Below, in pieces: positions 932 through 43,611 of a stretch of 64,000 nt of DNA (its first letter is position 1; each line of letters opens with the position of its first letter). The stretch is taken from sequence record NC_061443.1; one strand, given 5' to 3'. The notes beneath the pieces were generated by a model that saw nothing but the letters and a program-made list of their open reading frames with translations, was not told where the DNA came from and did no database searches. Position numbers and translations under genes: made by a program.

Positions 932-940
932 CTGTAAATA
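932..940 (+). promoter_or_regulatory. CTGTAAATA box, candidate phage-sigma promoter
   Basis: intergenic, 45 nt upstream of ATG 977; motif recurs at similar spacing before several genes. Confidence 0.6.
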
Positions 941-976
941 TCCTTACTTGGTTAACGTGCGCGTGGGATATTGAAA

Positions 977-1654
977 ATGGCGAAGTTGAAGAAAGAACCA
1001 GCGGCGAAAGTCAAAAAGAAAAAGACTTTGGCTGTCAAAACAAATAAAGAAAAAACGATTCCTATTCGTGTTGTGCAGGACACACGACCGATCATCACTT
1101 GCCCTGAAATGGAAGATAAGCCTCAGCCGTTTCTGTTTCGTGGCCAATGTCCAATCGTCACCTGTCAGTATTGCACACGCGAGACACCGACAGGTTGCAT
1201 GGCGCTTGACCGTAAAGAGTCAGCGGATCGTTCAATCTCCAACAAGGAGATACTCCATTACAAGAAAGGTCTCTTCCCTGAACTTAAAGAGATGGATCAG
1301 AAGACGCTGGACAATACGATTCGACGCGCACAAAATCGTACCCGCAATGCTATCTGTCTTACTATGTTTATTGCCGGGATTGATGATTCTGATTGCGATC
1401 GGTCTTTTAAATATGTAGAGGGCCGCTCCAAACTCGTCGATCAGGTTCATAACTATCTGATTCAAACGTTCAACGATTACCGTCCGTGGATGCTTGCGTA
1501 CCTCGACGACGAAAAACGATTCAGCGACATGGTTGGCAAAATAACCAACTCTGACTTTAATTTAGTTAACGCATTACGTTTGACTCCTCGTAAGTATCAG
1601 ACGTTCTGCCAGTCGCTACAAAATCTTAAACAATCTGGAGACTCTCATGAGTAA
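977..1654 (+). CDS. hypothetical protein, Lys-rich N-terminus and Cys cluster (possible Zn binding)
   Basis: ATG at 977 preferred over TTG 971; CPIVTCQYC...GC. Confidence 0.7.
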   Translation: MAKLKKEPAAKVKKKKTLAVKTNKEKTIPIRVVQDTRPIITCPEMEDKPQPFLFRGQCPIVTCQYCTRETPTGCMALDRKESADRSISNKEILHYKKGLFPELKEMDQKTLDNTIRRAQNRTRNAICLTMFIAGIDDSDCDRSFKYVEGRSKLVDQVHNYLIQTFNDYRPWMLAYLDDEKRFSDMVGKITNSDFNLVNALRLTPRKYQTFCQSLQNLKQSGDSHE

Positions 1655-3419
1655 CTTTATCTCCCTCGATCAGTATCGCGCGTTCATCAAGCGCAATATC
1701 CTGAAAGAGCCTCAGATGCTCGTCATTAATCAGACGCAGCCTCTGGGACAAATCTTCTTCCAATGCCCCGGCGATAACTTTGCGATGAAAGATATCATCG
1801 TGCCTGCATCGAAGAACGCGGTCGATCTGACTCAACAGGCGCCACTGGAAAATCTGCTGGCATGTAGTCAACTGAAAGCGCTGCTGCAAACGCAGAAACT
1901 CGTGCTGCTGAATCCGGAAGAAATGCCAACTCCTGGCGAAGGTATTCAGATGCCGCAGTTGAACACGCCTCCTGTTGCTGGTGCAGTGTCTGTTGACGGC
2001 GTGACTATCCCGAACGCAATCGTGATTGTCGAGCAGAACGGTAACGTGTGGACTGGTGCTTCTAACGGCAGCGGCGTATTCACTGTTGACGTATCTGGCC
2101 TGGAAGAAGGCGTGTTCTCGATCACTGTTACTGCTGATGGATTCGTGCCTGCGCGTTACAACTTCACTGCCGGTGCGCAGCCTCTACAGCCAATGCCTGA
2201 GCCTACCGTACACGCTGTCTTCAAAGAGACAACTGTAACGGGAACCACTGTTGCGAATGCTAATATCTCCGTATCAGTGCAGAGCAAAACGTTTACTGGT
2301 CAGGCTGATGATCAAGGTGCGTTCAGCGTTGACGTTGACCCACTGCCGTTTGACACAATTCACCTGACGATTACTGCTGCTGGTTATCTGGATAAAGTTG
2401 TTAACCACGTTGTTGACAGCATTCCTGGTCTGGCTCAGATTAACAGCGCTCCGTTCTTGTCTACCACCATCGCAGGTAAAGCAAGTCCTGAAGCTGAAAT
2501 CGAAATCCTGATCACTGGTCAATCCAATCAGTTCGCTACCGCTGCCGCAAACGGTGACTGGTCTGCGACTGTTGGTGCCGTTAAAGGTGAAGTCTCTATT
2601 CGTGTGCTGGAAAAAGACGGCTACGACGAAGCGACTGCTACCATGCAGCCCACCAAACTGCCTGCTCCTGTGCTTGCTGTTGATGACGCTGATAACATCG
2701 GTGAGAATCAAACAGTATTTGGCGGGGCAATCACTGGCCTGAGTGCAGAAGCAAACGACGTAGCGGTAACGCTGACTGTTCAGGCCGGTCTCTATGAAGG
2801 TACTGTTGACCTGCAATCAAGCCACTGGTCTGTGACTGGTGTTGATGCGAAAGCTGGTGTGGGTTCTGTAGGTGTTGTTAATCTGACGTCGGCCTTCTAT
2901 GAAGATGCCTCAACGCAGTTCAACATTCTGGAAGAGTTCGCACAGCCTACGCTGCAACAAGCGCAGGACGGTCAAACTGCTGTGGTCGGTGACACCGTAG
3001 CTTCTGCTACTGTTAAGATCACGATGGGCGGTGAGACTAAAACTGCTTCTTCAAATCCGCAGGGAGCGTTCTCTGTTGATGGATTTACCAACGTTGTTCC
3101 TGGCTCGATTCGTATTGAACTGTCACGCAACGGTTATCTGCCTGCCGTGTTTAACGTGACGCTTGTTGTTCAGGCGCTCGGACAACTGGATAATGAACTG
3201 GCTGTCGGTGAGGACACCGCTACAGGCCACGCTACACCAGGGTCTACGGTAACACTGACTCAGGGTGGCATTAGTGGTGACGCTGTTGCTGACGCATCTA
3301 CTGGCGAATTTATTATTAGCCTGTCCAGCCCGCTTGCGGCAGACACCCAGGTAGAGCTGAAAGTAGAACACGCGAACTACGTGACGTACACTGAAACCTT
3401 AGCGGTTTCTAATCCTTAA
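1647..3419 (+). CDS. Ig-like repeat virion (decoration/fibre) protein
   Basis: about six beta-rich repeats of the type TTVTGT..ANA.I.V.....TGQADDQGAFSV (bacterial Ig / carboxypeptidase-regulatory-like); N-terminal domain shared with 3472..4119. Confidence 0.7.
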   Translation: MSNFISLDQYRAFIKRNILKEPQMLVINQTQPLGQIFFQCPGDNFAMKDIIVPASKNAVDLTQQAPLENLLACSQLKALLQTQKLVLLNPEEMPTPGEGIQMPQLNTPPVAGAVSVDGVTIPNAIVIVEQNGNVWTGASNGSGVFTVDVSGLEEGVFSITVTADGFVPARYNFTAGAQPLQPMPEPTVHAVFKETTVTGTTVANANISVSVQSKTFTGQADDQGAFSVDVDPLPFDTIHLTITAAGYLDKVVNHVVDSIPGLAQINSAPFLSTTIAGKASPEAEIEILITGQSNQFATAAANGDWSATVGAVKGEVSIRVLEKDGYDEATATMQPTKLPAPVLAVDDADNIGENQTVFGGAITGLSAEANDVAVTLTVQAGLYEGTVDLQSSHWSVTGVDAKAGVGSVGVVNLTSAFYEDASTQFNILEEFAQPTLQQAQDGQTAVVGDTVASATVKITMGGETKTASSNPQGAFSVDGFTNVVPGSIRIELSRNGYLPAVFNVTLVVQALGQLDNELAVGEDTATGHATPGSTVTLTQGGISGDAVADASTGEFIISLSSPLAADTQVELKVEHANYVTYTETLAVSNP

Positions 3420-3427
3420 TATTACCT

Positions 3428-3445
3428 AAGGGGCTTCGGCCCCTT
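3428..3445 (+). terminator. hairpin, probable intrinsic terminator or processing stem
   Basis: AAGGGGC-TTCG-GCCCCTT just after the stop codon. Confidence 0.65.
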
Positions 3446-3471
3446 GTTGAACTACAATTCGGAGATTTACC

Positions 3472-4119
3472 ATGTCAGAGAAAGTTAAAGTACAGCCCAT
3501 CACGCTGACCGCTTACAACGAAAAGTACGGTCAAGACGTTGTTGCACCGATGTATGTTGCTAACCGTACCGAGCCTCGTGGCAACGTAATGTTCAGCGCA
3601 CAGGATGACATGGGCCAGCCGGTTCCTGTTCTCGTTCCAGCTACCTTCATCCCAATCGATCTGACTCAGCAAGCTACCAAAGAGAGCCTGTTGAAATCTA
3701 CTCACCTGCGCCGTGCGTTGCAGCGTAATCAGTTGGTTATCATCGACACTGAAAGCGCCGAGCACTATCTGCGTACCTCAGCATTGGCTAAGTCTGAAAT
3801 GGCTAACCTGAACAAAATGGGTAGCGCTATCGCTGCTGACCTGGGCGAAGAAGGCGGTACTCTGGCTGCAATCGATCTGGGCGGTGCTGCTCGTCGTCAG
3901 GTACACTTCGAAGGTGGTACTCAGTATTCTGAAAACCAATTCGTTAACGCATTCATCGTCCGTGCTGCTGACGATAGCGACGAGTCTGATGACAACCTGC
4001 AACGTGAATTCCTGTCTCGCGGCATTAACCTGCCTACGTCCGAGCTGGAAATCCTGCGTAAGCACATCACTCGTCCTGCAATCGTCGAACTGATCATGCA
4101 GGCTCTTGACGACGCATAA
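3472..4119 (+). CDS. hypothetical protein, paralogue of the N-terminal domain of the Ig-repeat protein
   Basis: GGAG RBS; shared motif VP....IDLTQQA..E.LL....L. Confidence 0.8.
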   Translation: MSEKVKVQPITLTAYNEKYGQDVVAPMYVANRTEPRGNVMFSAQDDMGQPVPVLVPATFIPIDLTQQATKESLLKSTHLRRALQRNQLVIIDTESAEHYLRTSALAKSEMANLNKMGSAIAADLGEEGGTLAAIDLGGAARRQVHFEGGTQYSENQFVNAFIVRAADDSDESDDNLQREFLSRGINLPTSELEILRKHITRPAIVELIMQALDDA

Positions 4120-4134
4120 TTCAGTGCTACAGAC

Positions 4135-4174
4135 AAAAAAAAATGGGAGGCCCCGAAAGGAGTCTCCCATTTTT
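4135..4174. terminator. bidirectional intrinsic terminator
   Basis: A9-TGGGAG...CTCCCA-T5 between convergent genes 3472..4119(+) and primase(-). Confidence 0.8.
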
Positions 4175-4195
4175 GTTACAGCAATTTATTTTCTG

Positions 4196-5263
4196 CTACG
4201 CTCGTTTGTTGGATATTGCTTTCACTGCGTTAGGTCTATTCCATCCCAATGCCTTAGCTGGCATGATGCACTTCTTACCGTGCAGGTCTTTCAACGTCAT
4301 GCGCACTTCTTTGATCAAGTTCATCGGAGCATTGTCTGGGTCGAGCTTAATCAGCTTACCGTCTTCGTCGAACTCACGAGGAAGTTTGAAATGCTTGACT
4401 GGTACTGGAGAGTTTTTCTCAAACTCTGCCTTGATTTTATTACGCAGCAACTTCCCGCCACCATCGTTGTCTGTCATCGTGTAGACAACACTCACGCCTA
4501 ACATCTCAAGCGTTCTACGTTTCGTTTCACCGAACTGCTCTGCGCCTAATACAGCAAGAGCTGGGATCCCATACGATAACAAAGCCAGAGCGTCACGAGG
4601 ACCTTCGACGAGAACAATGTAGCGTAGCTTGTATTTCTTCAAACACTCTTTAACTAAAGGCAAAGGAAACAGACCTTTCTCTTTTGCCCAGTCGCCGTTC
4701 GAGTTCACATAGCTGGTGCCGTTCATTTGCTTACGCAGATACGCAGCGATACCTCCTATGTATTTCGTGCCGTGCTTACAAGGGAAGAAGCAAACGTTAC
4801 TGCCCGTGCGTTGTGCATTAAGCAAACCACCAGCAGCCTGAACAAGCGCTCCAGGATATCCGCGCCACTCAACATCGACTGGCCATTCCATGTAGCTGTT
4901 ACGACCAAGTGCTTTCATCAATAGACCGACAGAAGGGTACGTACCGATCTTATTACCAATCTGCTCATACGTCTTGAACAGCGCACTCAAGCTATTCGTG
5001 TTAGCGTCTTTAAGCGCCCAGCCCTTTATTTCTTGAAGCTTGGCGTGTGCCGCTAATTTATTCCAGCCACCTTTCTCACCGCAACCGAAGCAGTGGAAGA
5101 AACCTAGAGGTATCTCCATACCCACAGAAGTGTAAATACCACAACTAGGGGTCTTGTCACTGTGAAAGGGACAGCACACCATAACAGTGTCACCGTTGTA
5201 TTTCTTATCGCCCGGTATTTTACCGATTTCGTCAAGTATTATCTGATGAACATCTTCTGCCAT
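4196..5263 (-). CDS. dnaG: DNA primase (CHC2 zinc finger + TOPRIM)
   Basis: CCPFHSDKTPSC...HCFGC zinc finger; LVEGPRDAL and TDNDGGG TOPRIM motifs. Confidence 0.9.
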   Translation of the reverse strand: MAEDVHQIILDEIGKIPGDKKYNGDTVMVCCPFHSDKTPSCGIYTSVGMEIPLGFFHCFGCGEKGGWNKLAAHAKLQEIKGWALKDANTNSLSALFKTYEQIGNKIGTYPSVGLLMKALGRNSYMEWPVDVEWRGYPGALVQAAGGLLNAQRTGSNVCFFPCKHGTKYIGGIAAYLRKQMNGTSYVNSNGDWAKEKGLFPLPLVKECLKKYKLRYIVLVEGPRDALALLSYGIPALAVLGAEQFGETKRRTLEMLGVSVVYTMTDNDGGGKLLRNKIKAEFEKNSPVPVKHFKLPREFDEDGKLIKLDPDNAPMNLIKEVRMTLKDLHGKKCIMPAKALGWNRPNAVKAISNKRA

Positions 5264-5302
5264 ACCATCACCTGTTTGTTTCGTAATTTGAGCATATAAG
5301 CA

Positions 5303-5311
5303 TATTTACAG
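5303..5311 (-). promoter_or_regulatory. CTGTAAATA box upstream of primase
   Basis: TATTTACAG on + strand = CTGTAAATA on -, 48 nt before the primase ATG; orientation follows the only minus-strand gene. Confidence 0.65.
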
Positions 5312-5326
5312 AATAAGGACAATAGA

Positions 5327-5659
5327 ATGGGCAATCCACATCGTTACGTGCATACGGCACAGCGTCGGTTCTACGACAAGCACTGGATTGGATTCTGCGA
5401 TCTGATTCGTGTTGAACCTCAGACCTGTGGGGCATTCGACAAACAGGATGATATGATTGGCCTGTCGCTCCCACGAGATTTTGACGTAGACACAGCAACA
5501 AAGAGTCTGCGTCTGATTTATACCGAGACTGACGAGAATGTAGAAGTACGCTGTTACCTGTTTGGTACTCGCTACTATAAATTCGTATTCTTCGAGCAAA
5601 CCATTGCCGTAAGCGAGGACACCAATGAGAACGTTAGCAAACATACCCGCGCGAGTTAA
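5327..5659 (+). CDS. hypothetical protein
   Basis: AAGGA RBS, divergent from primase. Confidence 0.7.
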   Translation: MGNPHRYVHTAQRRFYDKHWIGFCDLIRVEPQTCGAFDKQDDMIGLSLPRDFDVDTATKSLRLIYTETDENVEVRCYLFGTRYYKFVFFEQTIAVSEDTNENVSKHTRAS

Positions 5660-6710
5660 TGATACGCGCAATCTGTCCCGCATCGGTAAAATGATTGACG
5701 CTGCCCTTGACGTAAAGAACCAAGAGAAGCGTTGGCCGAAGAAGCGCGTCAGTCCTTCGATGTTTCCTATCTGCCCGATTCAAGAGGCAGCCAAACTGAT
5801 CTACCAGAAGCATAATAACTGCATGACAGGTGAGTCTGGCACCTTGCTGAACATCTTCGCTAAGGCGGGGACTGGAATGCACGAATCATTGCAGAACGCT
5901 CTGGGACATAGTGGCCAGATGGTTGGTCACTGGAAATGTACGAACGATAAATGCGTTGAGTACCCAAAGACCAAAGGCAAGACTGTCGATGGTGAGTACG
6001 TCAAAGGCAAATACACGCGAACTCGAAGCACGAACAATCGCTGTCCATCGTGCGACAAGCCCATGGCTTATGCAGAACTTAAAGTCCTGTACAAGTCATT
6101 AAAGGGATACGTCGATGGACTGATTGATAATCTGGACGGTACGTACAGCCTGATAGATTTGAAATCGACTATGGTGACCAAAGCTGCTGACGGTTCTTTC
6201 TTCGTTAAGTATCACCGCTTCCAGATTGCGACATACGCATACCTGCTGAAAAAGCGTTACGGCTATAACATCGTAGACTACACCCTGGTCTATGTGCCAC
6301 GCGACAACCCTAAAAAGTTTGTCGAGAAGACCTTTATCTTCGACGAGGCTGAGTCTAAGCGCGCCAAAGACTTTATGATGGAACAAATACGCGCATGGGA
6401 TGCTGCGGTAAAATCGGTGCGCACAGGCGACTTGCTGCCCGCTATCAAGCGGAAGCCGTGCAAGAGTGCCGAGTATTATTGGGACGAGTTCCACGGATAT
6501 GACACATGCCCTTTTGTTGACTATTGCTTTATTCAATCACACATGATTGACTTCATGAAGAAGTTGGAGCAGCGAATCATGGCCAACCCCGAACTGACTT
6601 ATATGGAAATCGTAAGTACAGGGCGGAAAACTCAACAACAAGGTCTGCTGCCGGACAAGAAGTCCAAGACTGGACGTCCGAAGCATATCGTAAAAACATT
6701 TGAGCTATGA
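5625..6710 (+). CDS. Cas4/RecB-family PD-(D/E)xK exonuclease with Fe-S-type Cys set and inserted Zn finger
   Basis: SPSMFPICP, GTGMH, GYVDGLID, IDLKST, QIATYAYL, and C-terminal C...CPFVDYC; extra CTNDKC/CPSC. Confidence 0.8.
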   Translation: MRTLANIPARVNDTRNLSRIGKMIDAALDVKNQEKRWPKKRVSPSMFPICPIQEAAKLIYQKHNNCMTGESGTLLNIFAKAGTGMHESLQNALGHSGQMVGHWKCTNDKCVEYPKTKGKTVDGEYVKGKYTRTRSTNNRCPSCDKPMAYAELKVLYKSLKGYVDGLIDNLDGTYSLIDLKSTMVTKAADGSFFVKYHRFQIATYAYLLKKRYGYNIVDYTLVYVPRDNPKKFVEKTFIFDEAESKRAKDFMMEQIRAWDAAVKSVRTGDLLPAIKRKPCKSAEYYWDEFHGYDTCPFVDYCFIQSHMIDFMKKLEQRIMANPELTYMEIVSTGRKTQQQGLLPDKKSKTGRPKHIVKTFEL

Positions 6711-7117
6711 GCATACAAAAAGATTATGAACGATCTATGCGCCGACTTAAGGAGTCTGTCTATCGCAAAGAGCATCTCGGCTATGTAGTCCCGAGATGCG
6801 TTGACGTTGTTCTCTCGAAATTGAGATCGCCTGAACAGGTAGTGTCGAGAAAGTATTTGGTCATGCTGATGTTATTCAGTCAGACATGCGAACAGCTCGG
6901 CTCAGCCTTGACTATGCGCGAACAACTCGTGGTCAAGATGACTATCCTAAGTCGCAAGCATCCAACGCCAGACATTCAGCGTAAAATCAGACGCCTTGAA
7001 GAACTGGTAATAAGCCAGGATAGAAACATCGAGAGTCATAGATTGCTTCTCGATTATCGTGCCAGCGTATTGATTGATATACTCGACGGCAAAGAACCTA
7101 ATTCACGTTACACTTGA
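6707..7117 (+). CDS. hypothetical protein, coiled-coil-like
   Basis: ATGA overlap with upstream stop. Confidence 0.7.
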   Translation: MSIQKDYERSMRRLKESVYRKEHLGYVVPRCVDVVLSKLRSPEQVVSRKYLVMLMLFSQTCEQLGSALTMREQLVVKMTILSRKHPTPDIQRKIRRLEELVISQDRNIESHRLLLDYRASVLIDILDGKEPNSRYT

Positions 7118-7124
7118 GGTACTC

Positions 7125-7604
7125 ATGGAAATTTATGTAAGCCTGAGTCAGGACAGCACGGATAAGAACCGTAGTAAAGTCACTAGCCCTGAATCAAACA
7201 CTGGGCGTGTCGATGTGTCCGAATACGCTTCACTGGAGAAGAAACTCCGCTTGACAGATGAAGCAAAAGACAAAGAGAAGCTGGCTCAAAAGGCTGGTGG
7301 CGGTGATTCTGTAAAGGGTAAGAAAGGCGCTAAGAAAGATAGCGATAAACCCAAGGATGACGACACTGATACGGACGAAGATCCATCATTAGACGATGAA
7401 GGTGACGCAGATGATTCAGATGACTCTTCCGATACAGATGGAGACGACTCCGATGGAGACACTAAAGCTAAGAAGTCAGGAAAGAAATCTGACAAGTCTG
7501 GAGCAAAGGACTCAGCGGACGCAGAAGACCCTGACGCAGACGAACCCGAAAGTGATGACGGGGATGCAGATGCTGAAGGCGCTGATGACGAGGACATCGA
7601 ATAG
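7125..7604 (+). CDS. low-complexity Asp/Lys-rich protein with N-terminal VSLS motif
   Basis: GAGGT RBS before ATG 7125 (MEIYVSLSQD); D-rich and K-rich blocks. Confidence 0.75.
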   Translation: MEIYVSLSQDSTDKNRSKVTSPESNTGRVDVSEYASLEKKLRLTDEAKDKEKLAQKAGGGDSVKGKKGAKKDSDKPKDDDTDTDEDPSLDDEGDADDSDDSSDTDGDDSDGDTKAKKSGKKSDKSGAKDSADAEDPDADEPESDDGDADAEGADDEDIE

Positions 7605-7617
7605 CGATAACGTCGAT

Positions 7618-8145
7618 GTGCCGAAGACATATGAAGCGTTGCGCGATGTTCTGATTGCTATTCGCTACATGTGCACCAAGCGAATGATCTTTCCTGTCGT
7701 AGTCGCCAACATCGAACAACGTAACGACTATCTGGTGATGAACAAACTCACCTTTAGCATGAAGCCTGGTAAATTCCTGACCGCTATTCAGGACAGCAAC
7801 TGCCCTGTAAACGTGTGTTGGCTCATGCGGGCCTTCACACGCACTGCATTGCACTTCGACCTGAAGCCTGTGATAGCTGATCGTAGTGGGGACTTCCAAC
7901 CACTGGTCAGTCGTTACTTCACTCAGGAAGATCCCGACTTCGCTTACCGTCGTCATTACGACATTCGCTACATGGCTGCGCTCACTGATATTTGTAAGCC
8001 CCGCATGTACACGCTTAATGGAGTTAATTATGGCGTACAAGTCTCTAGCCAAGAAACCGAAGAAGTCGAAAGCTGCGAAAGAAGCCGAGACACGGAACAA
8101 GGCTCACAAGCAAGCTCGCCGTGGGAAGCTCGGTCAGGCTGTTAA
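7618..8145 (+). CDS. hypothetical protein
   Basis: probable GTG start at 7618 after the 7604 stop; the track's 7396 start runs through the upstream gene. Confidence 0.6.
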   Translation: MPKTYEALRDVLIAIRYMCTKRMIFPVVVANIEQRNDYLVMNKLTFSMKPGKFLTAIQDSNCPVNVCWLMRAFTRTALHFDLKPVIADRSGDFQPLVSRYFTQEDPDFAYRRHYDIRYMAALTDICKPRMYTLNGVNYGVQVSSQETEEVESCERSRDTEQGSQASSPWEARSGC

Positions 8146-8686
8146 GACACTCAGCGCTGCATCGAAGAAATCCCGCCGCATGACGAAAGGTGAGAAACGC
8201 GCTATTCAGTTGCAGCCGTTCAAACCTCAAGTCGTACCGCAGCCTCCTAAAACTCCTCTGATGGAGAAAGGTCTTTCACTGAACGCGCTGATCAAATCGA
8301 CGCCACGTTTGATGAAAGAGAACGCCATGGAATGTTATGTCAATGGCGTTAAGCGCGGCAAGACGAACAAAGGTCTGCCTATGATTATGGCAAACGTTCG
8401 TCACAAAGATCCACTGCGTCCTAATAAAACAGTACGCATTCACAAGCCGATGATTATCGGTCTGGATGACCCGTTCAAGCCTATTTCAAAACAAAAGCGT
8501 GTACTGGTCAGTTGTCCCTGCGAGAACTTCGTGTTCATGTGGGAGTATGCAGATACCGAACACGGTGCTGCGCGAATCATTTACGGTAACGGCGAACCAC
8601 CAGACTTCACTAACCCAGGTCATGCGCCCGGTCTGTGCAAGCACCTGATGGCCTTAGCCGATCAAGTAAAACGTAACGGAGACTAA
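8030..8686 (+). CDS. SWIM zinc-finger protein with basic N-terminus
   Basis: GGAG RBS before ATG 8030; VSCPCENF...GLCKHLMAL = CxC...CxH SWIM signature. Confidence 0.75.
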   Translation: MAYKSLAKKPKKSKAAKEAETRNKAHKQARRGKLGQAVKTLSAASKKSRRMTKGEKRAIQLQPFKPQVVPQPPKTPLMEKGLSLNALIKSTPRLMKENAMECYVNGVKRGKTNKGLPMIMANVRHKDPLRPNKTVRIHKPMIIGLDDPFKPISKQKRVLVSCPCENFVFMWEYADTEHGAARIIYGNGEPPDFTNPGHAPGLCKHLMALADQVKRNGD

Positions 8687-8691
8687 TCCGA

Positions 8692-8973
8692 ATGTTCTTT
8701 AACAATCCTGCACCTGGTGTAATCCCGAACTATCCGATTGTGCATTCGATTCATGAGATGCACCGTCGTGTGGCTGAACTGAACGGCGAACTGATTGCCG
8801 CTGGTTGTACTGTTGTCGAGAACTGCGGCGAGATGTTGATTGAAGTGCCTAAAGGCGCATCTGCCAAAGTGGATGATATCATCCAGCGCCATCAGGACAT
8901 GTTCAAAGGCCCTGTTGTCAGCCGACCGGGTCGCTTGCAGATTGGAGGCGAAGATGCAGAAACAGAAGTTTAA
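8692..8973 (+). CDS. hypothetical protein
   Basis: ORF in tight operon. Confidence 0.6.
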   Translation: MFFNNPAPGVIPNYPIVHSIHEMHRRVAELNGELIAAGCTVVENCGEMLIEVPKGASAKVDDIIQRHQDMFKGPVVSRPGRLQIGGEDAETEV

Positions 8974-9382
8974 TCCTGAAACGCATAGCGTGTCGCTGCA
9001 TTTCGGCCAGCACATTGTTCACGGCCACGCGCAAGAAAGCGTGTTTGGTGACGCAATGCAGACGTTGCTTATGCGCGAAATCGAACGCAGTACCAAAGAA
9101 GCTATGGAGCAGTTCTCGGGTATTGCGACTGCGCCTCCTACCATTGAGTGTGAAACGAAAGATGCCAGTTCGATTCTCGCTTCGCTTCGTCAGTGGCAGG
9201 CAGTGATTGAAGCACAAGAACCTGTGAAAGAGTTCGAGCCGTGCTCTATCCCAGACTGGATGCGTCCTAGTCTCAAAGCGAAGGGAATGACAGAGGAAGA
9301 GATTGATAAAATCTTGATCACTGGCATCGAACCTTCGTGGGACGATAAGCCTGGCGTTGTGTTCCGTACAGTCACCATCTAA
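8954..9382 (+). CDS. hypothetical protein
   Basis: GGAGG RBS before ATG 8954. Confidence 0.7.
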   Translation: MQKQKFNPETHSVSLHFGQHIVHGHAQESVFGDAMQTLLMREIERSTKEAMEQFSGIATAPPTIECETKDASSILASLRQWQAVIEAQEPVKEFEPCSIPDWMRPSLKAKGMTEEEIDKILITGIEPSWDDKPGVVFRTVTI

Positions 9383-9597
9383 TGGCCTGTGCAGGTTGTG
9401 GCCGTCGTAGCTCTCGCATTAGTTACAACGGCAGTTCTGCTCCTCAGACAGAAATGGAAGAGGACGATACGTTGAGCGCTGCGCGTTTGACACCTCATGG
9501 CTGGGTACGCACTTGCGTTAAGTGTGGTGCTATCTCCGAGCCTTCACCTTTTGCAGAGAACATTGAAAAGCCTTGTGACTGCAAAACAGACGAGTGA
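9382..9597 (+). CDS. small Cys-rich (Zn-binding) protein
   Basis: CAGC, CVKC, CDC motifs; TAATG overlap. Confidence 0.65.
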   Translation: MACAGCGRRSSRISYNGSSAPQTEMEEDDTLSAARLTPHGWVRTCVKCGAISEPSPFAENIEKPCDCKTDE

Positions 9598-11801: not shown

Positions 11802-11852
11802 ATCCTAGCGGTGGCCATGTGCTGCCGCTTTTGTCATTCTGGAGATATTTCT

Positions 11853-12182
11853 ATGGAAATGCTCGTAAGCCTTAGCCACGAAATTCGCGTAGAGAAACAG
11901 GACAACGCTGCAACAGAAGCGCAGACGCAGGGACCAACTGACGCGCAACAAACAGCATTGGACATCCAAGAGCAACGTCGTATCGTAGAAGAATATGGTA
12001 TCGACGCTTCGAAAGAGGAAGTTGCTGACAAAGAGAAAGACCGCATCGAGCGTGAAGAAGAACAGGCAGATGAAAAACGCATTAAGCCTCCAGCAGATCT
12101 CGGTCAACGTAAGCCAATCGAAGATAAAGACCTGACAGCGACTGACATCCAAAATCAGCACGATAACCTGACGAAGATTTAG
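11853..12182 (+). CDS. acidic hypothetical protein with N-terminal VSLS motif
   Basis: GGAG RBS before ATG 11853 (MEMLVSLSHE). Confidence 0.75.
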   Translation: MEMLVSLSHEIRVEKQDNAATEAQTQGPTDAQQTALDIQEQRRIVEEYGIDASKEEVADKEKDRIEREEEQADEKRIKPPADLGQRKPIEDKDLTATDIQNQHDNLTKI

Positions 12183-12186
12183 GAAA

Positions 12187-12195
12187 CTGTAAATA
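12187..12195 (+). promoter_or_regulatory. CTGTAAATA box upstream of the sigma factor gene
   Basis: intergenic, 41 nt before ATG 12228. Confidence 0.65.
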
Positions 12196-12227
12196 AGAGT
12201 CAAAGCAACTAACAGGTGTATTTGACC

Positions 12228-13265
12228 ATGAACAATAAGTCGAATCTCACAGGCGGTCAGATAGAAAGCGTCATGGACACCATGTTGCATGACTGCCTGT
12301 GTGAAATCGTTGAGAACACGGACATATTCGACGTCCAGCTTACCTATTTATTGGGTCTGGTAACGTCGAATAAGAAACGAAAGCCATACAACGCTGAGAC
12401 ACGCGACCGTGCGATTAGCTTGTTGATTCGAGCACTCTCTGTCCCTCGTGATCAGAAAATGGTTTTCATCCGGGAACTTAAAATGGAGCGTAACTTCATT
12501 TACGTCTTCCTGGAAAATGTAATTAAACGGTACTACACGGTCTATGTCGGACTGTATCGCGCATTCATTACAACGCAAGATTCGACCAAGCGTGTTGCGT
12601 ATTCAAAACGACTTGACGTGTATGTGAAAATGTTTGGTGCCGAGTCGCGTTCAAAGTTATTCGTCGCGCTCTGCCGTCTGAACGATCTACTACCGCAGTT
12701 CATGGAATACTTCCACTCGGTAGTTGCTGACTTCTATCGTCTGTGCAGCAAGCAGACCAAGTTCTATGTTGATACCAATCGTGGTAAGCTCTACGACAGC
12801 AAAGACGTGCGCCAGAACTTCCTGCGTAACGTTATCATTGCAATCAACAAGTATGACTCGTCGCGTGGTGCGATAGTGAGTTATACGAAGTGGTGGATTC
12901 TTAACGCACAAACCTGTAGCAGTAGTGAGCATGAATATGGCATCGCGTACACTATCCCCCAGACTCAACGTAAGAAACTGGCGACAGGTGAAGACACTAC
13001 TTCTCTGAATTTCTCGGTAAGTCTCGATACTCCAGCGAACGAGTCTGATGAAGGGGCGGACGCGTCCTTGCATCAAAAGGTGAGTGACCATCATCACCTA
13101 GAAGATCACGTTGATAGTGAAAGACGTACCGAAAAACTGAGACTGCTTATTAAGCGCGTTGACCCTCTGGGCGTTGCTCGACTGACGATGGACGTTGGTG
13201 AGGAGTTCGATAAGTTTGAAATCGATCTCATGCGTAGACATATGCAAGCTCAAGGGCTAGCCTAA
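12228..13265 (+). CDS. phage sigma70-family RNA polymerase sigma factor
   Basis: DVRQNFLRNVIIAINKYDSSRGAIVSYTKWWI resembles sigma70 region 2 (DLIQEG...AVEKFD..RG..FSTYATWWI); no clear region 4 HTH. Confidence 0.7.
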   Translation: MNNKSNLTGGQIESVMDTMLHDCLCEIVENTDIFDVQLTYLLGLVTSNKKRKPYNAETRDRAISLLIRALSVPRDQKMVFIRELKMERNFIYVFLENVIKRYYTVYVGLYRAFITTQDSTKRVAYSKRLDVYVKMFGAESRSKLFVALCRLNDLLPQFMEYFHSVVADFYRLCSKQTKFYVDTNRGKLYDSKDVRQNFLRNVIIAINKYDSSRGAIVSYTKWWILNAQTCSSSEHEYGIAYTIPQTQRKKLATGEDTTSLNFSVSLDTPANESDEGADASLHQKVSDHHHLEDHVDSERRTEKLRLLIKRVDPLGVARLTMDVGEEFDKFEIDLMRRHMQAQGLA

Positions 13266-13267
13266 AA

Positions 13268-13276
13268 CTGTAAACA
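13268..13276 (+). promoter_or_regulatory. CTGTAAACA box upstream of SSB
   Basis: intergenic, 47 nt before ATG 13315. Confidence 0.6.
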
Positions 13277-13314
13277 GTGCATATCATAGCACAACTCAAT
13301 ATTGAGGAAATATA

Positions 13315-17742: not shown

Positions 17743-18450
17743 ATGAAAAAGATTCAACACGTAGTTCTTCCGACTGATGCTCTTAACGGCCTTATTCACG
17801 GCTTCCATCATCACAGCAGGACAACCGAGGAGTTCTGCAAATCCCTGTTCTACATTGATGTGACTAATCGAAGCGCACATGACGCTCTCTATTCCATCCT
17901 CAAACGAGACAAGACCTTAGGAATTATCCCTATGGGTTACGACAACGAGAAAGATGCGCGAGGGCATACCTCCCCTGCATCGCTGGCTATCGTGCTGTCT
18001 AACAATTTACTGCATCTGGATGACACGAAAATGTCCAGAGGCATTCTCAATATCTTCGGAGCACTGGCCCGAACCACGCACACTAACGATACTCAAATAA
18101 CAGTGTACGGCGAACCAGGCGTAGATAAAATTCTCAATATCGTGCGTCGTGTTGACTACCGAGATTATACTGAGGGCTCCGGTGTTAGTGCTGACGTAGT
18201 GATTGGAGATTTTGAACTACAATCGAATATCACAATAGACAATTTCGTATCAATGGCGATTGACCCTAAGTTCGAAGACGATGTACGGAACTCGCCTGCC
18301 ACGGAATACAAACTCGGCAGCAACTTCATGTTCATGCACCCTGATGAACTTGCTAAGGCTGTTCGCCTGATACGACGTTGCAGCAAGACCTGCATAATGC
18401 ACCCTGACCTGCATCGCTATTACTTTGAGAATGTAATCTGTAAATACTGA
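17743..18450 (+). CDS. hypothetical protein, paralogue of 19589..20356
   Basis: AGGAG RBS; shared C-terminal F...PDEL....K..I.H.D..R..FE..I. Confidence 0.8.
   Translation: MKKIQHVVLPTDALNGLIHGFHHHSRTTEEFCKSLFYIDVTNRSAHDALYSILKRDKTLGIIPMGYDNEKDARGHTSPASLAIVLSNNLLHLDDTKMSRGILNIFGALARTTHTNDTQITVYGEPGVDKILNIVRRVDYRDYTEGSGVSADVVIGDFELQSNITIDNFVSMAIDPKFEDDVRNSPATEYKLGSNFMFMHPDELAKAVRLIRRCSKTCIMHPDLHRYYFENVICKY
18438..18446 (+). promoter_or_regulatory. CTGTAAATA box upstream of the AcrVA2-like gene
   Basis: at the 3' end of the upstream CDS, 115 nt before ATG 18553. Confidence 0.4.
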
Positions 18451-26278: not shown

Positions 26279-26309
26279 AAGGGCTGCCATTGCTGGTGGC
26301 CCTTTTTCA
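26279..26309 (+). terminator. intrinsic terminator
   Basis: AGGGCTGCCA-TTGC-TGGTGGCCCT-TTTT. Confidence 0.75.
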
Positions 26310-26312
26310 TTT

Positions 26313-26321
26313 CTGTAAATA
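26313..26321 (+). promoter_or_regulatory. CTGTAAATA box
   Basis: directly after a terminator, 39 nt before ATG 26352. Confidence 0.6.
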
Positions 26322-33624: not shown

Positions 33625-34026
33625 ATGGAAAAGACGTACATGACACATTGGGGATCGCGCTATGTGCGGTCCTCTTCCGGAAAGTGGTATTCAGTTCATG
33701 GGCGTGATGGTACTTGGGTAACGAATCGTTATGGTACGCAGTTCTATCGTAGCGGCTCTGAGGTATGGAGGGACATAACTCTTGCCGACCGTCAGTCGTT
33801 GGAACGTGAGTTAATCAAACGCACCAGTGAAGACTACACCGAGCAAAAGCGTAGGTACGAATACTGGGGACGATTGGTGAGAGCGATTGCTCGCTGTTCA
33901 GAAGAGGAGAAGAATGAGCATACGGCAGAACTTGCCGAGATGATCGAAGCGCTTAGACAGCAATTCTATGGACAGAAAGTGCAGCAATTAAGCACAACAT
34001 TGGACGAAATAGCCGTTAAATCATAA
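33625..34026 (+). CDS. hypothetical protein
   Basis: ORF in operon. Confidence 0.7.
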   Translation: MEKTYMTHWGSRYVRSSSGKWYSVHGRDGTWVTNRYGTQFYRSGSEVWRDITLADRQSLERELIKRTSEDYTEQKRRYEYWGRLVRAIARCSEEEKNEHTAELAEMIEALRQQFYGQKVQQLSTTLDEIAVKS

Positions 34027-34044
34027 GCTCGTTCGTGCTATAAT
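33990..34044 (+). promoter_or_regulatory. early promoter module 5
   Basis: AAGCACAACATTGGACGAAATAGC box, TG-C-TATAAT at 34039. Confidence 0.75.
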
Positions 34045-39586: not shown

Positions 39587-39595
39587 CTGTAAACC
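39587..39595 (+). promoter_or_regulatory. CTGTAAACC variant box
   Basis: intergenic, 40 nt before ATG 39627. Confidence 0.5.
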
Positions 39596-41291: not shown

Positions 41292-42272
41292 ATGCGATTC
41301 GGATTCGCCTGCAAACTGATTGAACCGAACGGTAAGCAGCCCTACACAAATAAGAGCCTGAGCTATAAGCACTTCTCTGCGTTGTCTGCGCCTGACCAGC
41401 ACGGTAAACTCTTGGACGTTGTTACGCACAATCTGACTTCATTGCTCAACATGATAAAGCACGTTGGCAGACTGCGTACCGATATGCGTATGTTCCGAAT
41501 CACAAGTGAGTTGCTTCCACTGTATACTCACCCTAAGGTGTTTCACATGTACCTACGCCACGATATCGCGGCACTGGTTGAATCGTTACTTGCCTTATGT
41601 GGTGCAGAGGCTCGACGACGTGATGTGCGACTTTCGTTTCACCCAGGACAATTCACGGTGCTCGCATCTGATCGACCTGACGTTGTTCAGAACTCGATTG
41701 CCGAACTTGAGTACCATGCGTACTGCGCCTATCACATGGGATATGGCAGACGCTTTCAAGACTTCAAGATCAACATTCACCTGAGTGGTAGACTCGGTGC
41801 TACGGGATTTAGAACAGCCTTTAGCAAACTCTCTGACCGCTGCCGTTTGATGCTGACCGTGGAGAATGATGAAATCACTTCGAGCGTCGAGGACTGCTTA
41901 ACGTTATCCGACATATGCCCTATAGTGTTGGACATTCATCACCACTGGGTAATGACTAACGAATACATACGACCAGAAGATGATCGTGTCCAGAGAGTTA
42001 TAGACTCTTGGAGAGGCGTTCGACCTGTCGCGCATTACTCTGTGTCTCGACCTGAGTTCGTTAAGTCTCGTGGACTGCCTGATCAAAACAAGCTGTCTGC
42101 TAATCGTATGCAGTTACGAGCACACTCTGATTACTATCACAATGAAGACGTAAACGAGTGGGCGCTTTCGTTCACTGCTTTTGACCTAATGTGCGAGTCA
42201 AAAGCGAAGAATCTAGCTAGATCGAAATTGGCATGTTTTAGCCTCAACTCTGCAAATAACTGGACAAAATAA
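41292..42272 (+). CDS. uvsE: UV damage endonuclease UvsE/UvdE
   Basis: RFGFAC, MFRITSELLP, RLSFHPGQFTVL.S, INIH, LTVENDE, VLDIHHH, HSDY, DLMCESKAKNLA. Confidence 0.92.
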   Translation: MRFGFACKLIEPNGKQPYTNKSLSYKHFSALSAPDQHGKLLDVVTHNLTSLLNMIKHVGRLRTDMRMFRITSELLPLYTHPKVFHMYLRHDIAALVESLLALCGAEARRRDVRLSFHPGQFTVLASDRPDVVQNSIAELEYHAYCAYHMGYGRRFQDFKINIHLSGRLGATGFRTAFSKLSDRCRLMLTVENDEITSSVEDCLTLSDICPIVLDIHHHWVMTNEYIRPEDDRVQRVIDSWRGVRPVAHYSVSRPEFVKSRGLPDQNKLSANRMQLRAHSDYYHNEDVNEWALSFTAFDLMCESKAKNLARSKLACFSLNSANNWTK

Positions 42273-42305
42273 GGCTTGTTTCTGTAGGTAGCCCTGTGAT
42301 ACACT
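42250..42305 (+). promoter_or_regulatory. early promoter module 6
   Basis: CTGCAAATAACTGGACAAAATAAG box, TTGTTT -35, TG-A-TACACT at 42300. Confidence 0.8.
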
Positions 42306-42356: not shown

Positions 42357-42650
42357 ATGTTCACAACTACCCTCTCAACACGGAAGCCTGCTATCAACAT
42401 GTCCTATTCGAACGGCAACGCATATGCACCACGCAATCGTATCTCGTGTGTTTGGCCTGGCGCTTTGGACGTTCCTGCTCCAATCAAACGCTGGTGCCGT
42501 GCCCATGAAATCATTATTGACCTCGACGCCTACATGCGCGTTCGTTTTCGTGGTCGTCGTCCTGACATTCTGCTTTTGATTGCAGAACAGATCGCGCCGA
42601 ACAATCCTGACCTTGCCGGTCGAATCTTTGCAACTATCACTGAGGCTTAA
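42357..42650 (+). CDS. hypothetical protein
   Basis: GAGGA RBS. Confidence 0.7.
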   Translation: MFTTTLSTRKPAINMSYSNGNAYAPRNRISCVWPGALDVPAPIKRWCRAHEIIIDLDAYMRVRFRGRRPDILLLIAEQIAPNNPDLAGRIFATITEA

Positions 42651-42651
42651 A

Positions 42652-42915
42652 ATGAAAGTTCAATCTATGGAAGCTGTATATGGTGCTCAATACACCAACT
42701 CTCCTATGACGGAGAAACGCGGCTTTCGTTCTATCGAATCGCAGTATGTCGATGGAACGGAGGTTAGATTACAACGGCTATCGCATGATATACATGAACG
42801 TGTGATTGTGGGCTATGACCGTCTTGGTCGTGCTGTGTACGGGACATTCGTACCGCAAACAACGTTCGAAGTGCGTGACAGCAAGGAAAGCGAACCGAAT
42901 AAGACGGCGCCCTAG
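42652..42915 (+). CDS. hypothetical protein
   Basis: GAGG RBS before ATG 42652. Confidence 0.65.
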   Translation: MKVQSMEAVYGAQYTNSPMTEKRGFRSIESQYVDGTEVRLQRLSHDIHERVIVGYDRLGRAVYGTFVPQTTFEVRDSKESEPNKTAP

Positions 42916-42986
42916 CAAGCTCACAACCAGAAGCCATAGAATAACAATACCAATTCATGCGCTTACCTATCGTGGGGTGTCTTAAA

Positions 42987-43364
42987 ATGATCGTTATATG
43001 TAATAGCTCGAAAGAATTTTCAGCCGACCGTTTGGCTCATGGTGACGCTTTTGTTTTTGGGAAGACACGCATGTTGTTACGTGCTGACTTCATCGTCCTG
43101 ACCGACAAGAACAATAACGTTTTCGTAGTACGCAAATCTGATGTTGTTTGGTCTCCCGAGCTTACGGGCGCAACGCATGTGATTAAAATCCGGGCGTATG
43201 CCCAGGTTAAGCCGTTTGAACTCAACGCAGCATGTCCTCAGTTTAACAGTCGTGTGTTTGGGACAATCGCGTTCCGTAACCCACACTTCGAGCACCGTCT
43301 TGGTAGCTTGAAATATACAGAGACAATCTTCGGAGGTTTACATGGCACGGTATCATGTGTTTAG
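42987..43364 (+). CDS. hypothetical protein
   Basis: ORF in operon; start uncertain. Confidence 0.6.
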   Translation: MIVICNSSKEFSADRLAHGDAFVFGKTRMLLRADFIVLTDKNNNVFVVRKSDVVWSPELTGATHVIKIRAYAQVKPFELNAACPQFNSRVFGTIAFRNPHFEHRLGSLKYTETIFGGLHGTVSCV

Positions 43365-43593
43365 TGCGACTCATAAATACTACGGCGAAGCATATGAAGG
43401 GACTTGGCTGAAAGAGGTAACTCTTAACGGTCATCAAGTCCTCAACGCAGAGTTCCCCAACTTCGAATCGGCAAAAGAGTGTGCCGACAAGTTGCATGAG
43501 GTTTGCGATATTGGGTGGATCGTGTATAACGCTTTCTCTGAACGCGCTATGTACGATACCCGTACTGAACAAGGCGAGTCTGTAAACAACTAA
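43342..43593 (+). CDS. hypothetical protein
   Basis: GGAGGT RBS. Confidence 0.7.
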   Translation: MARYHVFSATHKYYGEAYEGTWLKEVTLNGHQVLNAEFPNFESAKECADKLHEVCDIGWIVYNAFSERAMYDTRTEQGESVNN

Positions 43594-43611
43594 CAGGCCC
43601 GCCTGTAAATC
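43580..43611 (+). promoter_or_regulatory. tandem CTGTAAACA / CTGTAAATC boxes
   Basis: copies at 43580 and 43603, upstream of ATG 43665. Confidence 0.5.

What the first reader, a model, noticed from the sequence alone, without database searches (positions are those of the whole stretch)
932..43611. CTGTAAAYA single-box promoter regulon, probably read by the phage sigma factor, which carries the box itself
Seen: CTGTAAAYA occurs at 932, 5311 (minus strand), 12187, 13268, 18438, 26313, 43580 and 63845, with near variants at 39587 and 43603. About one copy would be expected by chance (64,000 x 2 strands x 2 variants / 4^9). Six copies lie 39-48 nt upstream of a start codon (977, primase, sigma, SSB, 26352, and 39627 for the variant), and the box flips strand exactly where the only minus-strand gene does. 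No -35 consensus accompanies it. Known: T4 gp55 lacks region 4 and reads only TATAAATA. Inference: the sigma-like gene 12228..13265, which has region 2 but no clear region 4, defines a middle/late regulon through this box and amplifies its own expression.
Basis: partly seen in the sequence, partly recalled or inferred. Interest (0 to 1): 0.7.

Follow-up and report, generated by a model that had tools for sequence, protein, structure and literature searches.

The report
Single-box middle promoter, jumbo phage
The repeated word CTGTAAAYA is a real, gene-oriented promoter box with no -35 element that heads the replication-type genes of an Erwinia jumbo phage; it is conserved across a wide jumbo-phage lineage and was already flagged as a putative promoter in a relative, but which of two phage sigma-like proteins reads it is not settled.

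Summary
The window is Erwinia amylovora jumbo phage pEa_SNUABM_2 (record 186001-250000).

**Observation: confirmed.** CTGTAAAYA occurs 9 times in the window against 0.9 expected. It occurs 34 times in the 265-kb genome, and every copy points the same way as the local genes. Most copies lie 25-70 nt before a start codon, and several follow a terminator. The box extends to rAAT-CTGTAAAYA, carries no -35 information, and shows an A preference 7 nt downstream.

**Conservation.** The box is kept at syntenic sites in Yoloswag, JA29, Lu11 and PaBG. It is the top oriented 8-mer in Xanthomonas phage PhiXhv-12 and recurs in a Vibrio and a P. putida jumbo phage. Lu11's GenBank record already labels it "putative middle/late promoter".

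**Regulon.** It heads primase, SSB, clamp loader, polymerase, ligase and both sigma-like genes. Most structural and lysis genes carry a different box, (G)CTAATTT. A third class, sigma70-type with an extended -10, marks early genes.

**Reader of the box: unresolved.**
- gp242 is a true sigma70-family protein with no detectable region 4.
- The phage also encodes a probable second, ECF-like sigma, gp335. Its operon has a host-type promoter; gp242's gene does not.
- My split is gp242 about 0.4 and gp335 about 0.3.

No transcript data exist. This is a new member of a known kind, of moderate interest.

The parts
928..940 (+). Class-1 box (TAAT-CTGTAAATA), 45 nt before the start of gp225 (977-1654)
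   Evidence: Conserved at the syntenic site in Yoloswag and JA29.
5303..5315 (-). Class-1 box on the minus strand, 48 nt before the primase gp228 start (5263)
   Evidence: DnaG zinc ribbon + Toprim. Conserved in Yoloswag and JA29. Vibrio GR7B primase also has TGTAAAG upstream.
12183..12195 (+). Class-1 box 41 nt before the sigma gene gp242. It follows gp241 and lies downstream of a terminator-like hairpin at 11807-11829.
   Evidence: Present in Yoloswag (CTGTAAAGA) and JA29; absent in Lu11, PaBG, Peetri, PhiXhv-12 and GR7B.
12228..13265 (+). gp242, a sigma70-family protein with regions 1.2-2.4 (and possibly 3.0), a 3.2-like linker, and a short C-terminal module carrying an invariant DPxGxAR motif. 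No region 4 is detectable.
   Evidence: phrog_17569. PF04542 in homologues, never a region-4 family. Model pLDDT 81. Foldseek and VIA-align match E. coli and Caulobacter sigma70 over residues 3-233, Z up to 15.3. The PDB profile search aligns only region 2. Family alignment.
13264..13276 (+). Class-1 box (AAAA-CTGTAAACA) 47 nt before SSB gp243 (13315-14583). This is the most deeply conserved copy.
   Evidence: Syntenic copies in Yoloswag, JA29, Lu11 (annotated as promoter), PaBG (CTGTCAATA), Peetri, PhiXhv-12 and GR7B.
18434..18446 (+). Class-1 box overlapping the end of gp246, before gp247 (GTG at 18472 or RefSeq ATG at 18553)
26309..26321 (+). Class-1 box directly after a terminator hairpin and T-run (about 26281-26311), 39 nt before gp258 (26352)
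39587..39595 (+). Variant box CTGTAAACC, 40 nt before gp285 (39627)
43580..43611 (+). Box CTGTAAACA (43580) plus variant CTGTAAATC (43603), 85 and 62 nt before gp294 (43665)
63449..63457 (+). Box CTGTAAACA, 32 nt before gp322 (63481).
63845..63853 (+). Box inside gp322. Either an internal promoter or a non-functional copy.

Best explanation
rAAT-CTGTAAAYA is the promoter of the phage's 'middle' gene class. That class covers DNA replication, recombination and nucleotide metabolism genes, plus both sigma-like genes.

The box acts as a single, extended -10-type element. In this reading TAAATA occupies about -12 to -7, CTG and the A/T-rich bases lie just upstream, and transcription starts at an A about 7 nt downstream. 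No -35 element is involved.

The box is read by the host's core RNA polymerase carrying a phage-encoded sigma factor in place of sigma70. I marginally favour gp242 (window 12228-13265) as that factor. It has a sigma70-like 1.2-2.4(-3.0) body and lacks a region-4 DNA-binding domain. In the Erwinia/Dickeya subclade the copy in front of gp242 would then give positive feedback.

What is shown: the statistics, orientation, placement and conservation of the box, and the sigma fold of gp242.

What is inferred: promoter function (about 0.9), dependence on a phage-encoded sigma (about 0.7), and gp242 as that sigma (about 0.4, which is the confidence given here).
For: **The box is a promoter-like element**
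- 9 copies in the window against 0.92 expected.
- 34 of 34 genomic copies are co-oriented with the genes.
- TGTAAATA is the top oriented 8-mer in the genome, and CTGTAAA is the top word enriched in spacers.
- About 21 of 34 copies lie 25-70 nt before annotated starts, and about 7 follow a hairpin plus T-run.
- There is no -35 information, and there is an A preference at +7.

**It is not a host sigma70 promoter**
- It lacks T at -7 and the canonical TGn spacing.
- The same genome writes good extended -10 sigma70 promoters elsewhere.
- Canonical sigma70 sites are depleted.

**Conservation**
- Footprints at syntenic sites in Yoloswag and JA29.
- Lu11 has the box annotated as promoter, and PaBG has variants.
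- Peetri and PhiXhv-12 carry it. In PhiXhv-12 it is 11 sense, 0 antisense, 0.18 expected.
- GR7B carries it.

- Sigma fold with Z up to 15.3.
- No region-4 HMM in 120 homologues.
- The C-terminus is even shorter in Peetri and GR7B, which still keep the box.
- Some structural alignments reach sigma70 residues about 467-500, a region 3.0-like helix that could contact the CTG/AAT extension.
- By established knowledge, T4 gp55 is a region-4-less sigma that reads the one-box TATAAATA.
Against: - No TSS or expression data exist for any member of the clade.
- gp242's gene has no sigma70-type promoter nearby. The count in window 1-20000 is 11 against 18.7 expected, and a terminator-like hairpin separates the gene from the upstream operon. 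If gp242 reads its own promoter class, its first expression is unexplained.
- A second sigma-like gene, gp335, is co-conserved with the box, and its operon has a host-type promoter in two Erwinia phages.
- A sigma70-like sigma-2 domain would be expected to prefer T at -7. The other box, TAATTT, offers that; this box does not.
- phiEco32's sigma reads a similar TGTA-core single box.
- gp242 shows no homology to T4 gp55, and no gp33 was found.
Confidence: 0.4

Rival explanations
1. Sigma cascade. The box is a middle promoter read by the second, ECF-like sigma gp335 (record 263903-265045, outside the window). gp335 is made early from a host sigma70-type promoter. gp242, whose gene sits behind the box, is a middle product that reads the late box (G)CTAATTT.
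For: - The gp332-336 operon has a class-1 box followed by a well-formed sigma70-type promoter with the shared upstream element. This layout is conserved in Yoloswag.
- gp242 has only the class-1 box and no host-type promoter.
- The gp335-family model matches ECF sigmas first in four libraries. VIA-align gives Z 9.2 and rmsd 3.0 A to a sigma-2 domain, and Z 6-7.5 to whole sigH, sigE and AlgU.
- The PaBG authors report HHpred 97% to sigmaE for the orthologue.
- gp335 homologues are present wherever tested, including PhiXhv-12 (hhalign 94%).
- TAATTT keeps T-12, A-11 and T-7, as expected for a sigma70-like sigma-2 domain such as gp242's.
- phiEco32 gp36 reads the single box AATGTA centred at -11.5 (PMC12276001).
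Against: - The sigma identity of gp335 rests on weak scores: Foldseek E >= 0.2, hhalign against the gp242 family not significant, and no PDB sequence hit.
- ECF sigmas normally need a -35 element and lack region 3.0, yet the box has an upstream extension and no -35.
- JA29 has no sigma70-type promoter before the gp335 operon; it has three class-1 boxes instead.
- No CTAATTT-type box was seen in PhiXhv-12, although it has a gp242-type sigma.
Confidence: 0.3
2. No phage sigma is needed. The box is read by the host sigma70 holoenzyme, either directly as a weak -10-like element or after modification or appropriation by a non-sigma phage factor, as in the T4 MotA/AsiA system.
For: - TAAATA shares T-12, A-11 and A-9 with TATAAT.
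- In JA29 neither sigma-like gene has an evident host-type promoter, so some basal host recognition of the box may be needed to start the programme.
- Many phage proteins here are of unknown function.
Against: - There is no -35 element and no second element at fixed spacing.
- The box has A rather than T at -7, and the TG is displaced by one base from the extended -10 position.
- The phage uses a clearly different, canonical extended -10 design for its presumed early promoters.
- The box is invariant across hosts as different as Erwinia, Pseudomonas, Xanthomonas and Vibrio. This points to a phage-borne reader.
Confidence: 0.15
3. The box is not a promoter. It is an RNA-level or other DNA signal at gene starts, such as an RNA processing site, a translational signal or a regulator's operator.
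For: - Strict orientation and placement before genes would also fit an RNA signal.
- Four of the 34 copies lie inside genes.
Against: - Several copies sit immediately after intrinsic-terminator hairpins, where little upstream transcript would exist.
- The box-to-start distance varies from 18 to about 60 nt, while Shine-Dalgarno sequences are separate.
- The box is A/T-rich and -10-like, with a purine at +7.
- Divergent primase/gp229 promoters share one spacer.
Confidence: 0.05

Closest known systems
'Putative middle/late promoter' annotated in Pseudomonas phage Lu11 (GenBank JQ768459)
   Same: Same sequence (AAAA-CTGTAAAT-A/G), same orientation, and the same syntenic site between the sigma and SSB genes. 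The two phages belong to the same lineage, the Lu11/PaBG/Alexandra group (PMC7412058).
   Different: The Lu11 annotation is only a prediction, with no reader assigned in the record. Here the upstream flank is rAAT rather than AAAA, an extra copy sits before the sigma gene, and a separate late box is distinguished.
T4 late promoters (TATAAATA) read by gp55 with gp33 and the gp45 clamp
   Same: A single A/T-rich box of 8-9 bp at the -10 region with no -35. TGTAAATA differs from TATAAATA by one base.
   Different: gp242 has no detectable homology to gp55 (hhalign 0.2%). No gp55 or gp33 homologue was found. The box heads replication-type genes rather than virion genes. gp242 is 345 aa with a sigma70-like 1.2-2.4 body.
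phiEco32 middle/late promoters (AATGTA centred at -11.5) read by the phage sigma gp36 (PMC12276001)
   Same: One-box promoters with a TGTA core at a similar position, read by a phage-encoded sigma on host core RNAP, within an early, middle and late programme.
   Different: phiEco32 is a different phage group (a podovirus). gp36 serves both middle and late genes, whereas here two distinct boxes and two sigma-like proteins exist. No gp79-like factor has been identified here.
Bacterial extended -10 (TGnTATAAT) promoters of sigma70
   Same: Function without a -35 element, through extra contacts just upstream of the -10 hexamer.
   Different: The consensus is not met: TG is one base closer to the hexamer, and the hexamer is TAAATA with A at -7. 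The phage's own presumed early promoters do meet the consensus.
Bacillus phage SPO1 sigma cascade (gp28, then gp33/34); from general knowledge
   Same: Successive phage sigma factors would switch host core RNAP between promoter classes. One sigma gene lies in the regulon of the previous class.
   Different: SPO1 promoters are bipartite. The order and even the identity of the two sigmas here is unproven.

Membership tests
Sigma70-family sigma factor (gp242) | Sigma-2 domain (regions 2.1-2.4) with the core-binding and -10-melting motif | tested here: met
   The PDB profile search aligns positions 110-233 to RpoD/SigA region 2, including the KYD...SY.KWWI motif. VIA-align gives Z up to 15.3 over residues 3-233 against sigma70 residues 111-446. 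Several homologues carry PF04542.
Sigma70-family sigma factor (gp242) | Region 4 helix-turn-helix that binds the -35 element | tested here: not met
   No region-4 Pfam family in gp242 or in 120 homologues. No structural alignment covers residues 288-341. The Peetri and GR7B orthologues end right after the DPxGxAR motif.
Sigma70-family sigma factor (gp242) | Binds host core RNAP and directs promoter-specific initiation | not testable with these tools
   Needs biochemistry.
T4 gp55-type late transcription system | Sigma homologous to gp55 | tested here: not met
   hhalign of the gp242 family against T4 gp55 gives probability 0.2%. phmmer of gp55 against all phage ORFs gives no hit below E 0.06.
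T4 gp55-type late transcription system | gp33-type co-activator present | tested here: inconclusive
   phmmer of T4 gp33 finds nothing significant. Iyer et al. 2021 state that group-2 jumbo phages have a gp33 orthologue, and a single-sequence search is insensitive.
T4 gp55-type late transcription system | Box TATAAATA before late (virion) genes | tested here: not met
   The box is TGTAAATA and heads replication-type genes. Virion and lysis genes mostly carry (G)CTAATTT.
Single-element (-10-only) phage promoter | Conserved box, co-oriented with genes, in spacers, without -35 information | tested here: met
Single-element (-10-only) phage promoter | Transcripts start a fixed short distance downstream | not testable with these tools
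   No infection transcriptome is available. Metatranscriptome contigs were uninformative. The only hint is an A in 21 of 34 copies at +7.
Lu11-type 'middle/late promoter' | Same consensus at syntenic positions in related genomes | tested here: met
Sigma70 extended -10 promoter | TG at -15/-14 plus a TATAAT-like hexamer with T at -7 | tested here: not met
   Box profile. Contrast with the class-3 sites TGTGATATAAT.
ECF-type sigma factor (gp335, candidate alternative reader) | Sigma-2 and sigma-4 domains | tested here: inconclusive
   ECF sigmas are the first hits in PDB, VIA-align (Z 9.2 for residues 149-251; Z 6-7.5 for 150-380), AFDB-SwissProt and BFVD, but all scores are weak. There is no sequence-profile support here. 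HHpred 97% is reported for the PaBG orthologue.

The most novel reading that the evidence does not exclude
A whole lineage of RNAP-less jumbo phages, infecting Erwinia, Dickeya, Pseudomonas, Xanthomonas and Vibrio, shares an ancient transcription switch. In it a sigma70-like factor has replaced region 4 with a short DPxGxAR module and reads a 12-13 bp '-10 plus upstream extension' box (TGTAAATA core) with no -35 contact. This would be a natural intermediate between bacterial extended -10 recognition and T4's gp55 system. It would work alongside a second, N-terminally extended ECF-like sigma that reads a separate late box, giving a two-sigma, three-tier programme not yet described for jumbo phages.
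Probability: 0.3. Interest if true: 0.6.

Novelty: new member of a known kind. Interest (0 to 1): 0.4.

Why it matters
Most jumbo phages lack their own RNA polymerase, and how they time their genes is largely untested. This phage group now offers a concrete hypothesis that can be tested in vitro. It has three sequence-defined promoter classes and two candidate phage sigma factors. The middle box is conserved across hosts from Erwinia to Vibrio.

If confirmed, the work would give:
- portable, host-independent promoter and sigma pairs;
- a better basis for annotating operons and start codons in about 80 related genomes;
- a natural example of how a sigma70-like protein works without region 4.

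As it stands, the finding mainly re-discovers a motif that Lu11's authors annotated in 2012 and fits the generic expectation for phage sigma factors.

Tried and rejected
1. **Transcript evidence.** The look-up of sequencing runs found only metagenome and metatranscriptome contigs of relatives. Laying four RNA-type runs on 11800-14700 gave fragmentary contigs and no usable 5' ends.

2. **Literature.** There are no papers on transcription in Alexandravirus, Yoloswag, HRDY3 or fHe-Yen9-02. The motif string returns only unrelated papers. The Lu11 announcement is not held.

3. **Phyletic argument, retracted.** I first argued that distant phages have the box and a gp242-type sigma but no gp335. A more divergent query gives weak hits in the Peetri group, and PhiXhv-12's syntenic protein is a gp335 homologue by hhalign.

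4. **Assumption that an ECF-like sigma must need a -35 element.** This was weakened by phiEco32 gp36.

5. **Conservation of recognition helices.** I compared them between the two sigma families across deep divergences. Both are similarly conserved, so the comparison does not discriminate.

6. **GGACATT as a second promoter word in PhiXhv-12.** Rejected; it reflects coding (Asp-Ile) bias inside genes.

7. **Strict TTGACA-N17-TATAAT scan.** Such sites are depleted and not co-oriented. The real early class was only seen by reading the spacers.

8. **T4 gp55 and gp33 homology searches.** Negative.

9. **Paralogue search with the gp242 profile in the genome.** None found.

10. **Fourth, bipartite motif upstream of the remaining late genes.** None evident.

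Full report
**Identity of the window**

The window is 100% identical to Erwinia phage pEa_SNUABM_2 (NC_061443.1, Alexandravirus, 265,442 bp), positions 186001-250000. I fetched the rest of the genome so that the motif could be judged genome-wide. Genes run on the plus strand from about 186 kb round to 43 kb, and on the minus strand from 43 to 186 kb. The one exception is the primase gp228.

**Observation**

- CTGTAAAYA occurs 9 times in the window against 0.92 expected, and 0 of 100 shuffles reach 9.
- The near variants at 39587 and 43603 exist.
- The stated 39-48 nt distances to start codons are correct against the RefSeq annotation.
- In the whole genome there are 34 copies, and all 34 point the same way as the local genes.
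- TGTAAATA is the single most over-represented sense-strand 8-mer: 27 sense, 2 antisense, 1.9 expected.
- CTGTAAA is the word most enriched in spacers.
- About 21 copies lie 25-70 nt before an annotated start, 4 lie inside genes, and about 7 follow a hairpin plus T-run directly.
- The aligned copies extend the box to rAAT-CTGTAAAYA. They show no information at all from -40 to -5, so there is no -35 element. They show an A in 21 of 34 copies 7 nt downstream, a plausible +1.
- A PWM scan adds variants (CTGTAAAGA, CTGTAAATG and others) at the right distance from starts. It gives 54 hits, 49 of them co-oriented, against about 22 in random sequence.

**Which genes follow the box**

The box precedes primase, sigma gp242, SSB, clamp loader, a DNA polymerase gene, NAD ligase, a DNA methylase, an HNH gene, and the gp332-336 operon next to the topoisomerase genes, among others. 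It is not found before the major capsid, sheath or portal genes. This is a middle-type, replication-centred set.

**Two further promoter-like classes**

1. (G)CTAATTT(nA).
   - CTAATTT occurs 23 times, all in the sense orientation.
   - It lies 22-45 nt before virion and lysis genes: the portal region, PAAR, head-tail connector, endolysin and others.
   - In the window it occurs at 20378 and 20745.
   - A TAATTTGA variant lies at 5284 before the gp229 operon, divergent from the primase box.
2. Sigma70-type promoters.
   - They have an extended -10 (TGTGATATAAT, TATGCTATACT), a weak -35, and a shared element (C/T)TGGACAAAA 36-37 nt upstream of the TG.
   - They lie in the small-gene region at about 28.2, 34.0, 42.3, 45.7, 51.0, 55.3, 57.3 and 58.3 kb.

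Strict sigma70 consensus sites are depleted. The genome therefore looks three-tiered: a host-type early class, the CTGTAAAYA class, and the CTAATTT late class.

**Conservation**

- The box is retained at the syntenic spots before gp225, primase, sigma and SSB in Yoloswag and JA29, while the flanking spacer has diverged.
- In Lu11 (sigma 37% identical) AAAA-CTGTAAAT(A/G) is enriched and co-oriented. The GenBank record annotates it as 'putative middle/late promoter', including the copy between sigma and SSB.
- PaBG has TGTAAAC and CTGTCAATA variants. It keeps TAATTT before its sheath genes: 6 sense, 0 antisense.
- The box persists in much more distant jumbo phages whose sigma is only about 25% identical:
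  - P. putida phage Peetri has CTGTAAA 4 sense and 0 antisense.
  - In Xanthomonas PhiXhv-12, TGTAAATA is the top 8-mer in 82 kb (11 sense, 0 antisense, 0.18 expected) but is absent from the 38-kb structural block.
  - Vibrio GR7B has seven copies 35-50 nt before starts.
- In all of these, one copy lies right after the sigma gene.
- The copy in front of the sigma gene itself is confined to the Erwinia/Dickeya subclade.

**gp242**

- It belongs to phrog_17569 'sigma factor' and has no Pfam hit itself, but some homologues carry Sigma70_r2 and none carries a region-4 family.
- An AlphaFold model (pLDDT 81) matches E. coli and Caulobacter sigma70 over residues 3-233 (regions 1.2 to 2.4), with Z up to 15.3. 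A few alignments run on into region 3.0.
- A profile search of PDB sequences aligns only region 2.
- After a disordered 3.2-like linker (NFSVSLD...), the C-terminus is three helices with an invariant DPxGxAR motif. Peetri and GR7B orthologues stop right after that motif.
- gp242 is not a gp55 orthologue (hhalign 0.2%), and no gp55 or gp33 homologue was detected.

**A second candidate reader**

- The PaBG paper (PMC7412058) mentions a possible second sigma, gene 112. Its counterpart here is gp335 (record 263903-265045; BLASTP E 8e-28, phrog_19229 'unknown').
- A model of the family (pLDDT 83) hits ECF sigmas first in four libraries. Residues 149-251 superpose on a sigma-2 domain at Z 9.2 and 3.0 A. 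Residues 150-380 superpose on whole sigH, sigE and AlgU at Z 6-7.5. HI_1459, ShbA, FecI and phage 'RpoE/ECF' models also appear. Every score is weak, and profile searches give nothing. I rate it about 70% a sigma.
- It is co-conserved with the box. PhiXhv-12's syntenic protein matches at hhalign 94%, and the Peetri group gives weak hits.
- Its operon is preceded by a class-1 box followed by a well-formed sigma70-type promoter, and this layout is conserved in Yoloswag. JA29 has three class-1 boxes instead.
- gp242, by contrast, has no host-type promoter for 12 kb upstream, and a terminator-like hairpin (11807-11829) precedes it.

**Weighing the readers**

For gp242:
- It has no region 4 and possibly a region 3.0-like helix, which fits a box with an upstream extension.
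- T4 gp55 provides a precedent.
- It is the more conserved of the two proteins, matching an invariant box.

For gp335:
- TAATTT, with T at -7, suits a sigma70-like sigma-2 domain better than TAAATA does.
- phiEco32's sigma reads a similar single TGTA-core box (PMC12276001).

My estimates are:
- the box is a promoter: about 0.9;
- it depends on a phage sigma: about 0.7;
- the box is not a promoter: about 0.05.

**Comparison with known systems and novelty**

The element works like the one-box promoters of T4 (gp55) and phiEco32 (gp36). It is the same element that Lu11's authors annotated in 2012. Reviews already expect sigma homologues of RNAP-less jumbo phages to read phage-specific promoters (PMC7824862, PMC13282480). 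What is new here:
- the breadth of conservation;
- the separation into three classes;
- the middle-type rather than late gene content;
- the recognition that two sigma-like proteins compete for the assignment.

I file it as a new member of a known kind, with interest 0.4.

Noticed in passing
window 20378-20386, 20745-20751, 5284-5291; genome-wide in L003-L006: A second oriented one-box motif, (G)CTAATTT(nA). CTAATTT occurs 23 times in sense and 0 in antisense, 22-45 nt before virion and lysis genes, so it is probably the late promoter. In the window it precedes gp249, gp250 and, as the variant TAATTTGA, the gp229 operon divergent from primase. It is conserved in Yoloswag, JA29 and PaBG.
   Followed up: partly
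window ~28194-28238, 34000-34044, 42260-42305, 45673-45717, 50932-50975, 55278-55322, 57264-57308, 58282-58327: A family of sigma70-type promoters with an extended -10 (TGnTAYAMT), a weak -35, and a conserved (C/T)TGGACAAAA element 36-37 nt upstream of the TG. They are probably the host-read early promoters of the small-gene region. The upstream element could be an UP element or an activator site.
   Followed up: partly
L007:13903-15045 (record 263903-265045, outside the window): gp335, annotated as hypothetical, is the orthologue of PaBG gene 112. It folds like an ECF sigma (sigma-2 plus a sigma-4-like C-terminus) with a 150-aa N-terminal extension. Its operon has both a class-1 box (record 260910) and a sigma70-type promoter (record ~260930-260977).
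   Followed up: yes
L004:34035-35099 (record 84035-85099): About 1 kb with no annotated gene lies directly downstream of a perfect class-1 box (record 85088-85096, minus strand). ARAGORN finds no tRNA. It may hold unannotated small ORFs or a non-coding RNA.
   Followed up: partly
L007:2557-2565 (record 252557-252565): A box CTGTAAACA that follows a terminator overlaps the annotated ATG of gp323. The start codon of gp323 is probably mis-called, or the transcript is nearly leaderless.
   Followed up: no
window 14128-14515: The acidic, low-complexity C-terminal part of the SSB gene (GAAGAC/GATGAC repeats) attracts very high, chimeric contig depth from wastewater runs. This is an artefact source for read-based analyses.
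   Followed up: no
L016 and L013 (Xanthomonas phage PhiXhv-12): Many TGTAAATA boxes there are abutted by an inverted repeat, TGCCA-N4-TGGCA (for example ggtgccattttggcatccTGTAAATA). This may be an operator for a regulator or a small hairpin. It is not present in the Erwinia phage.
   Followed up: no
window 14642-17164: The 'UvsX-like recombinase' gp244 is 840 aa, and its best RecA-domain match covers only residues 244-325. It is much longer than the approximately 500-aa orthologues in PaBG, Lu11 and JA29, so it carries large extra regions.
   Followed up: no
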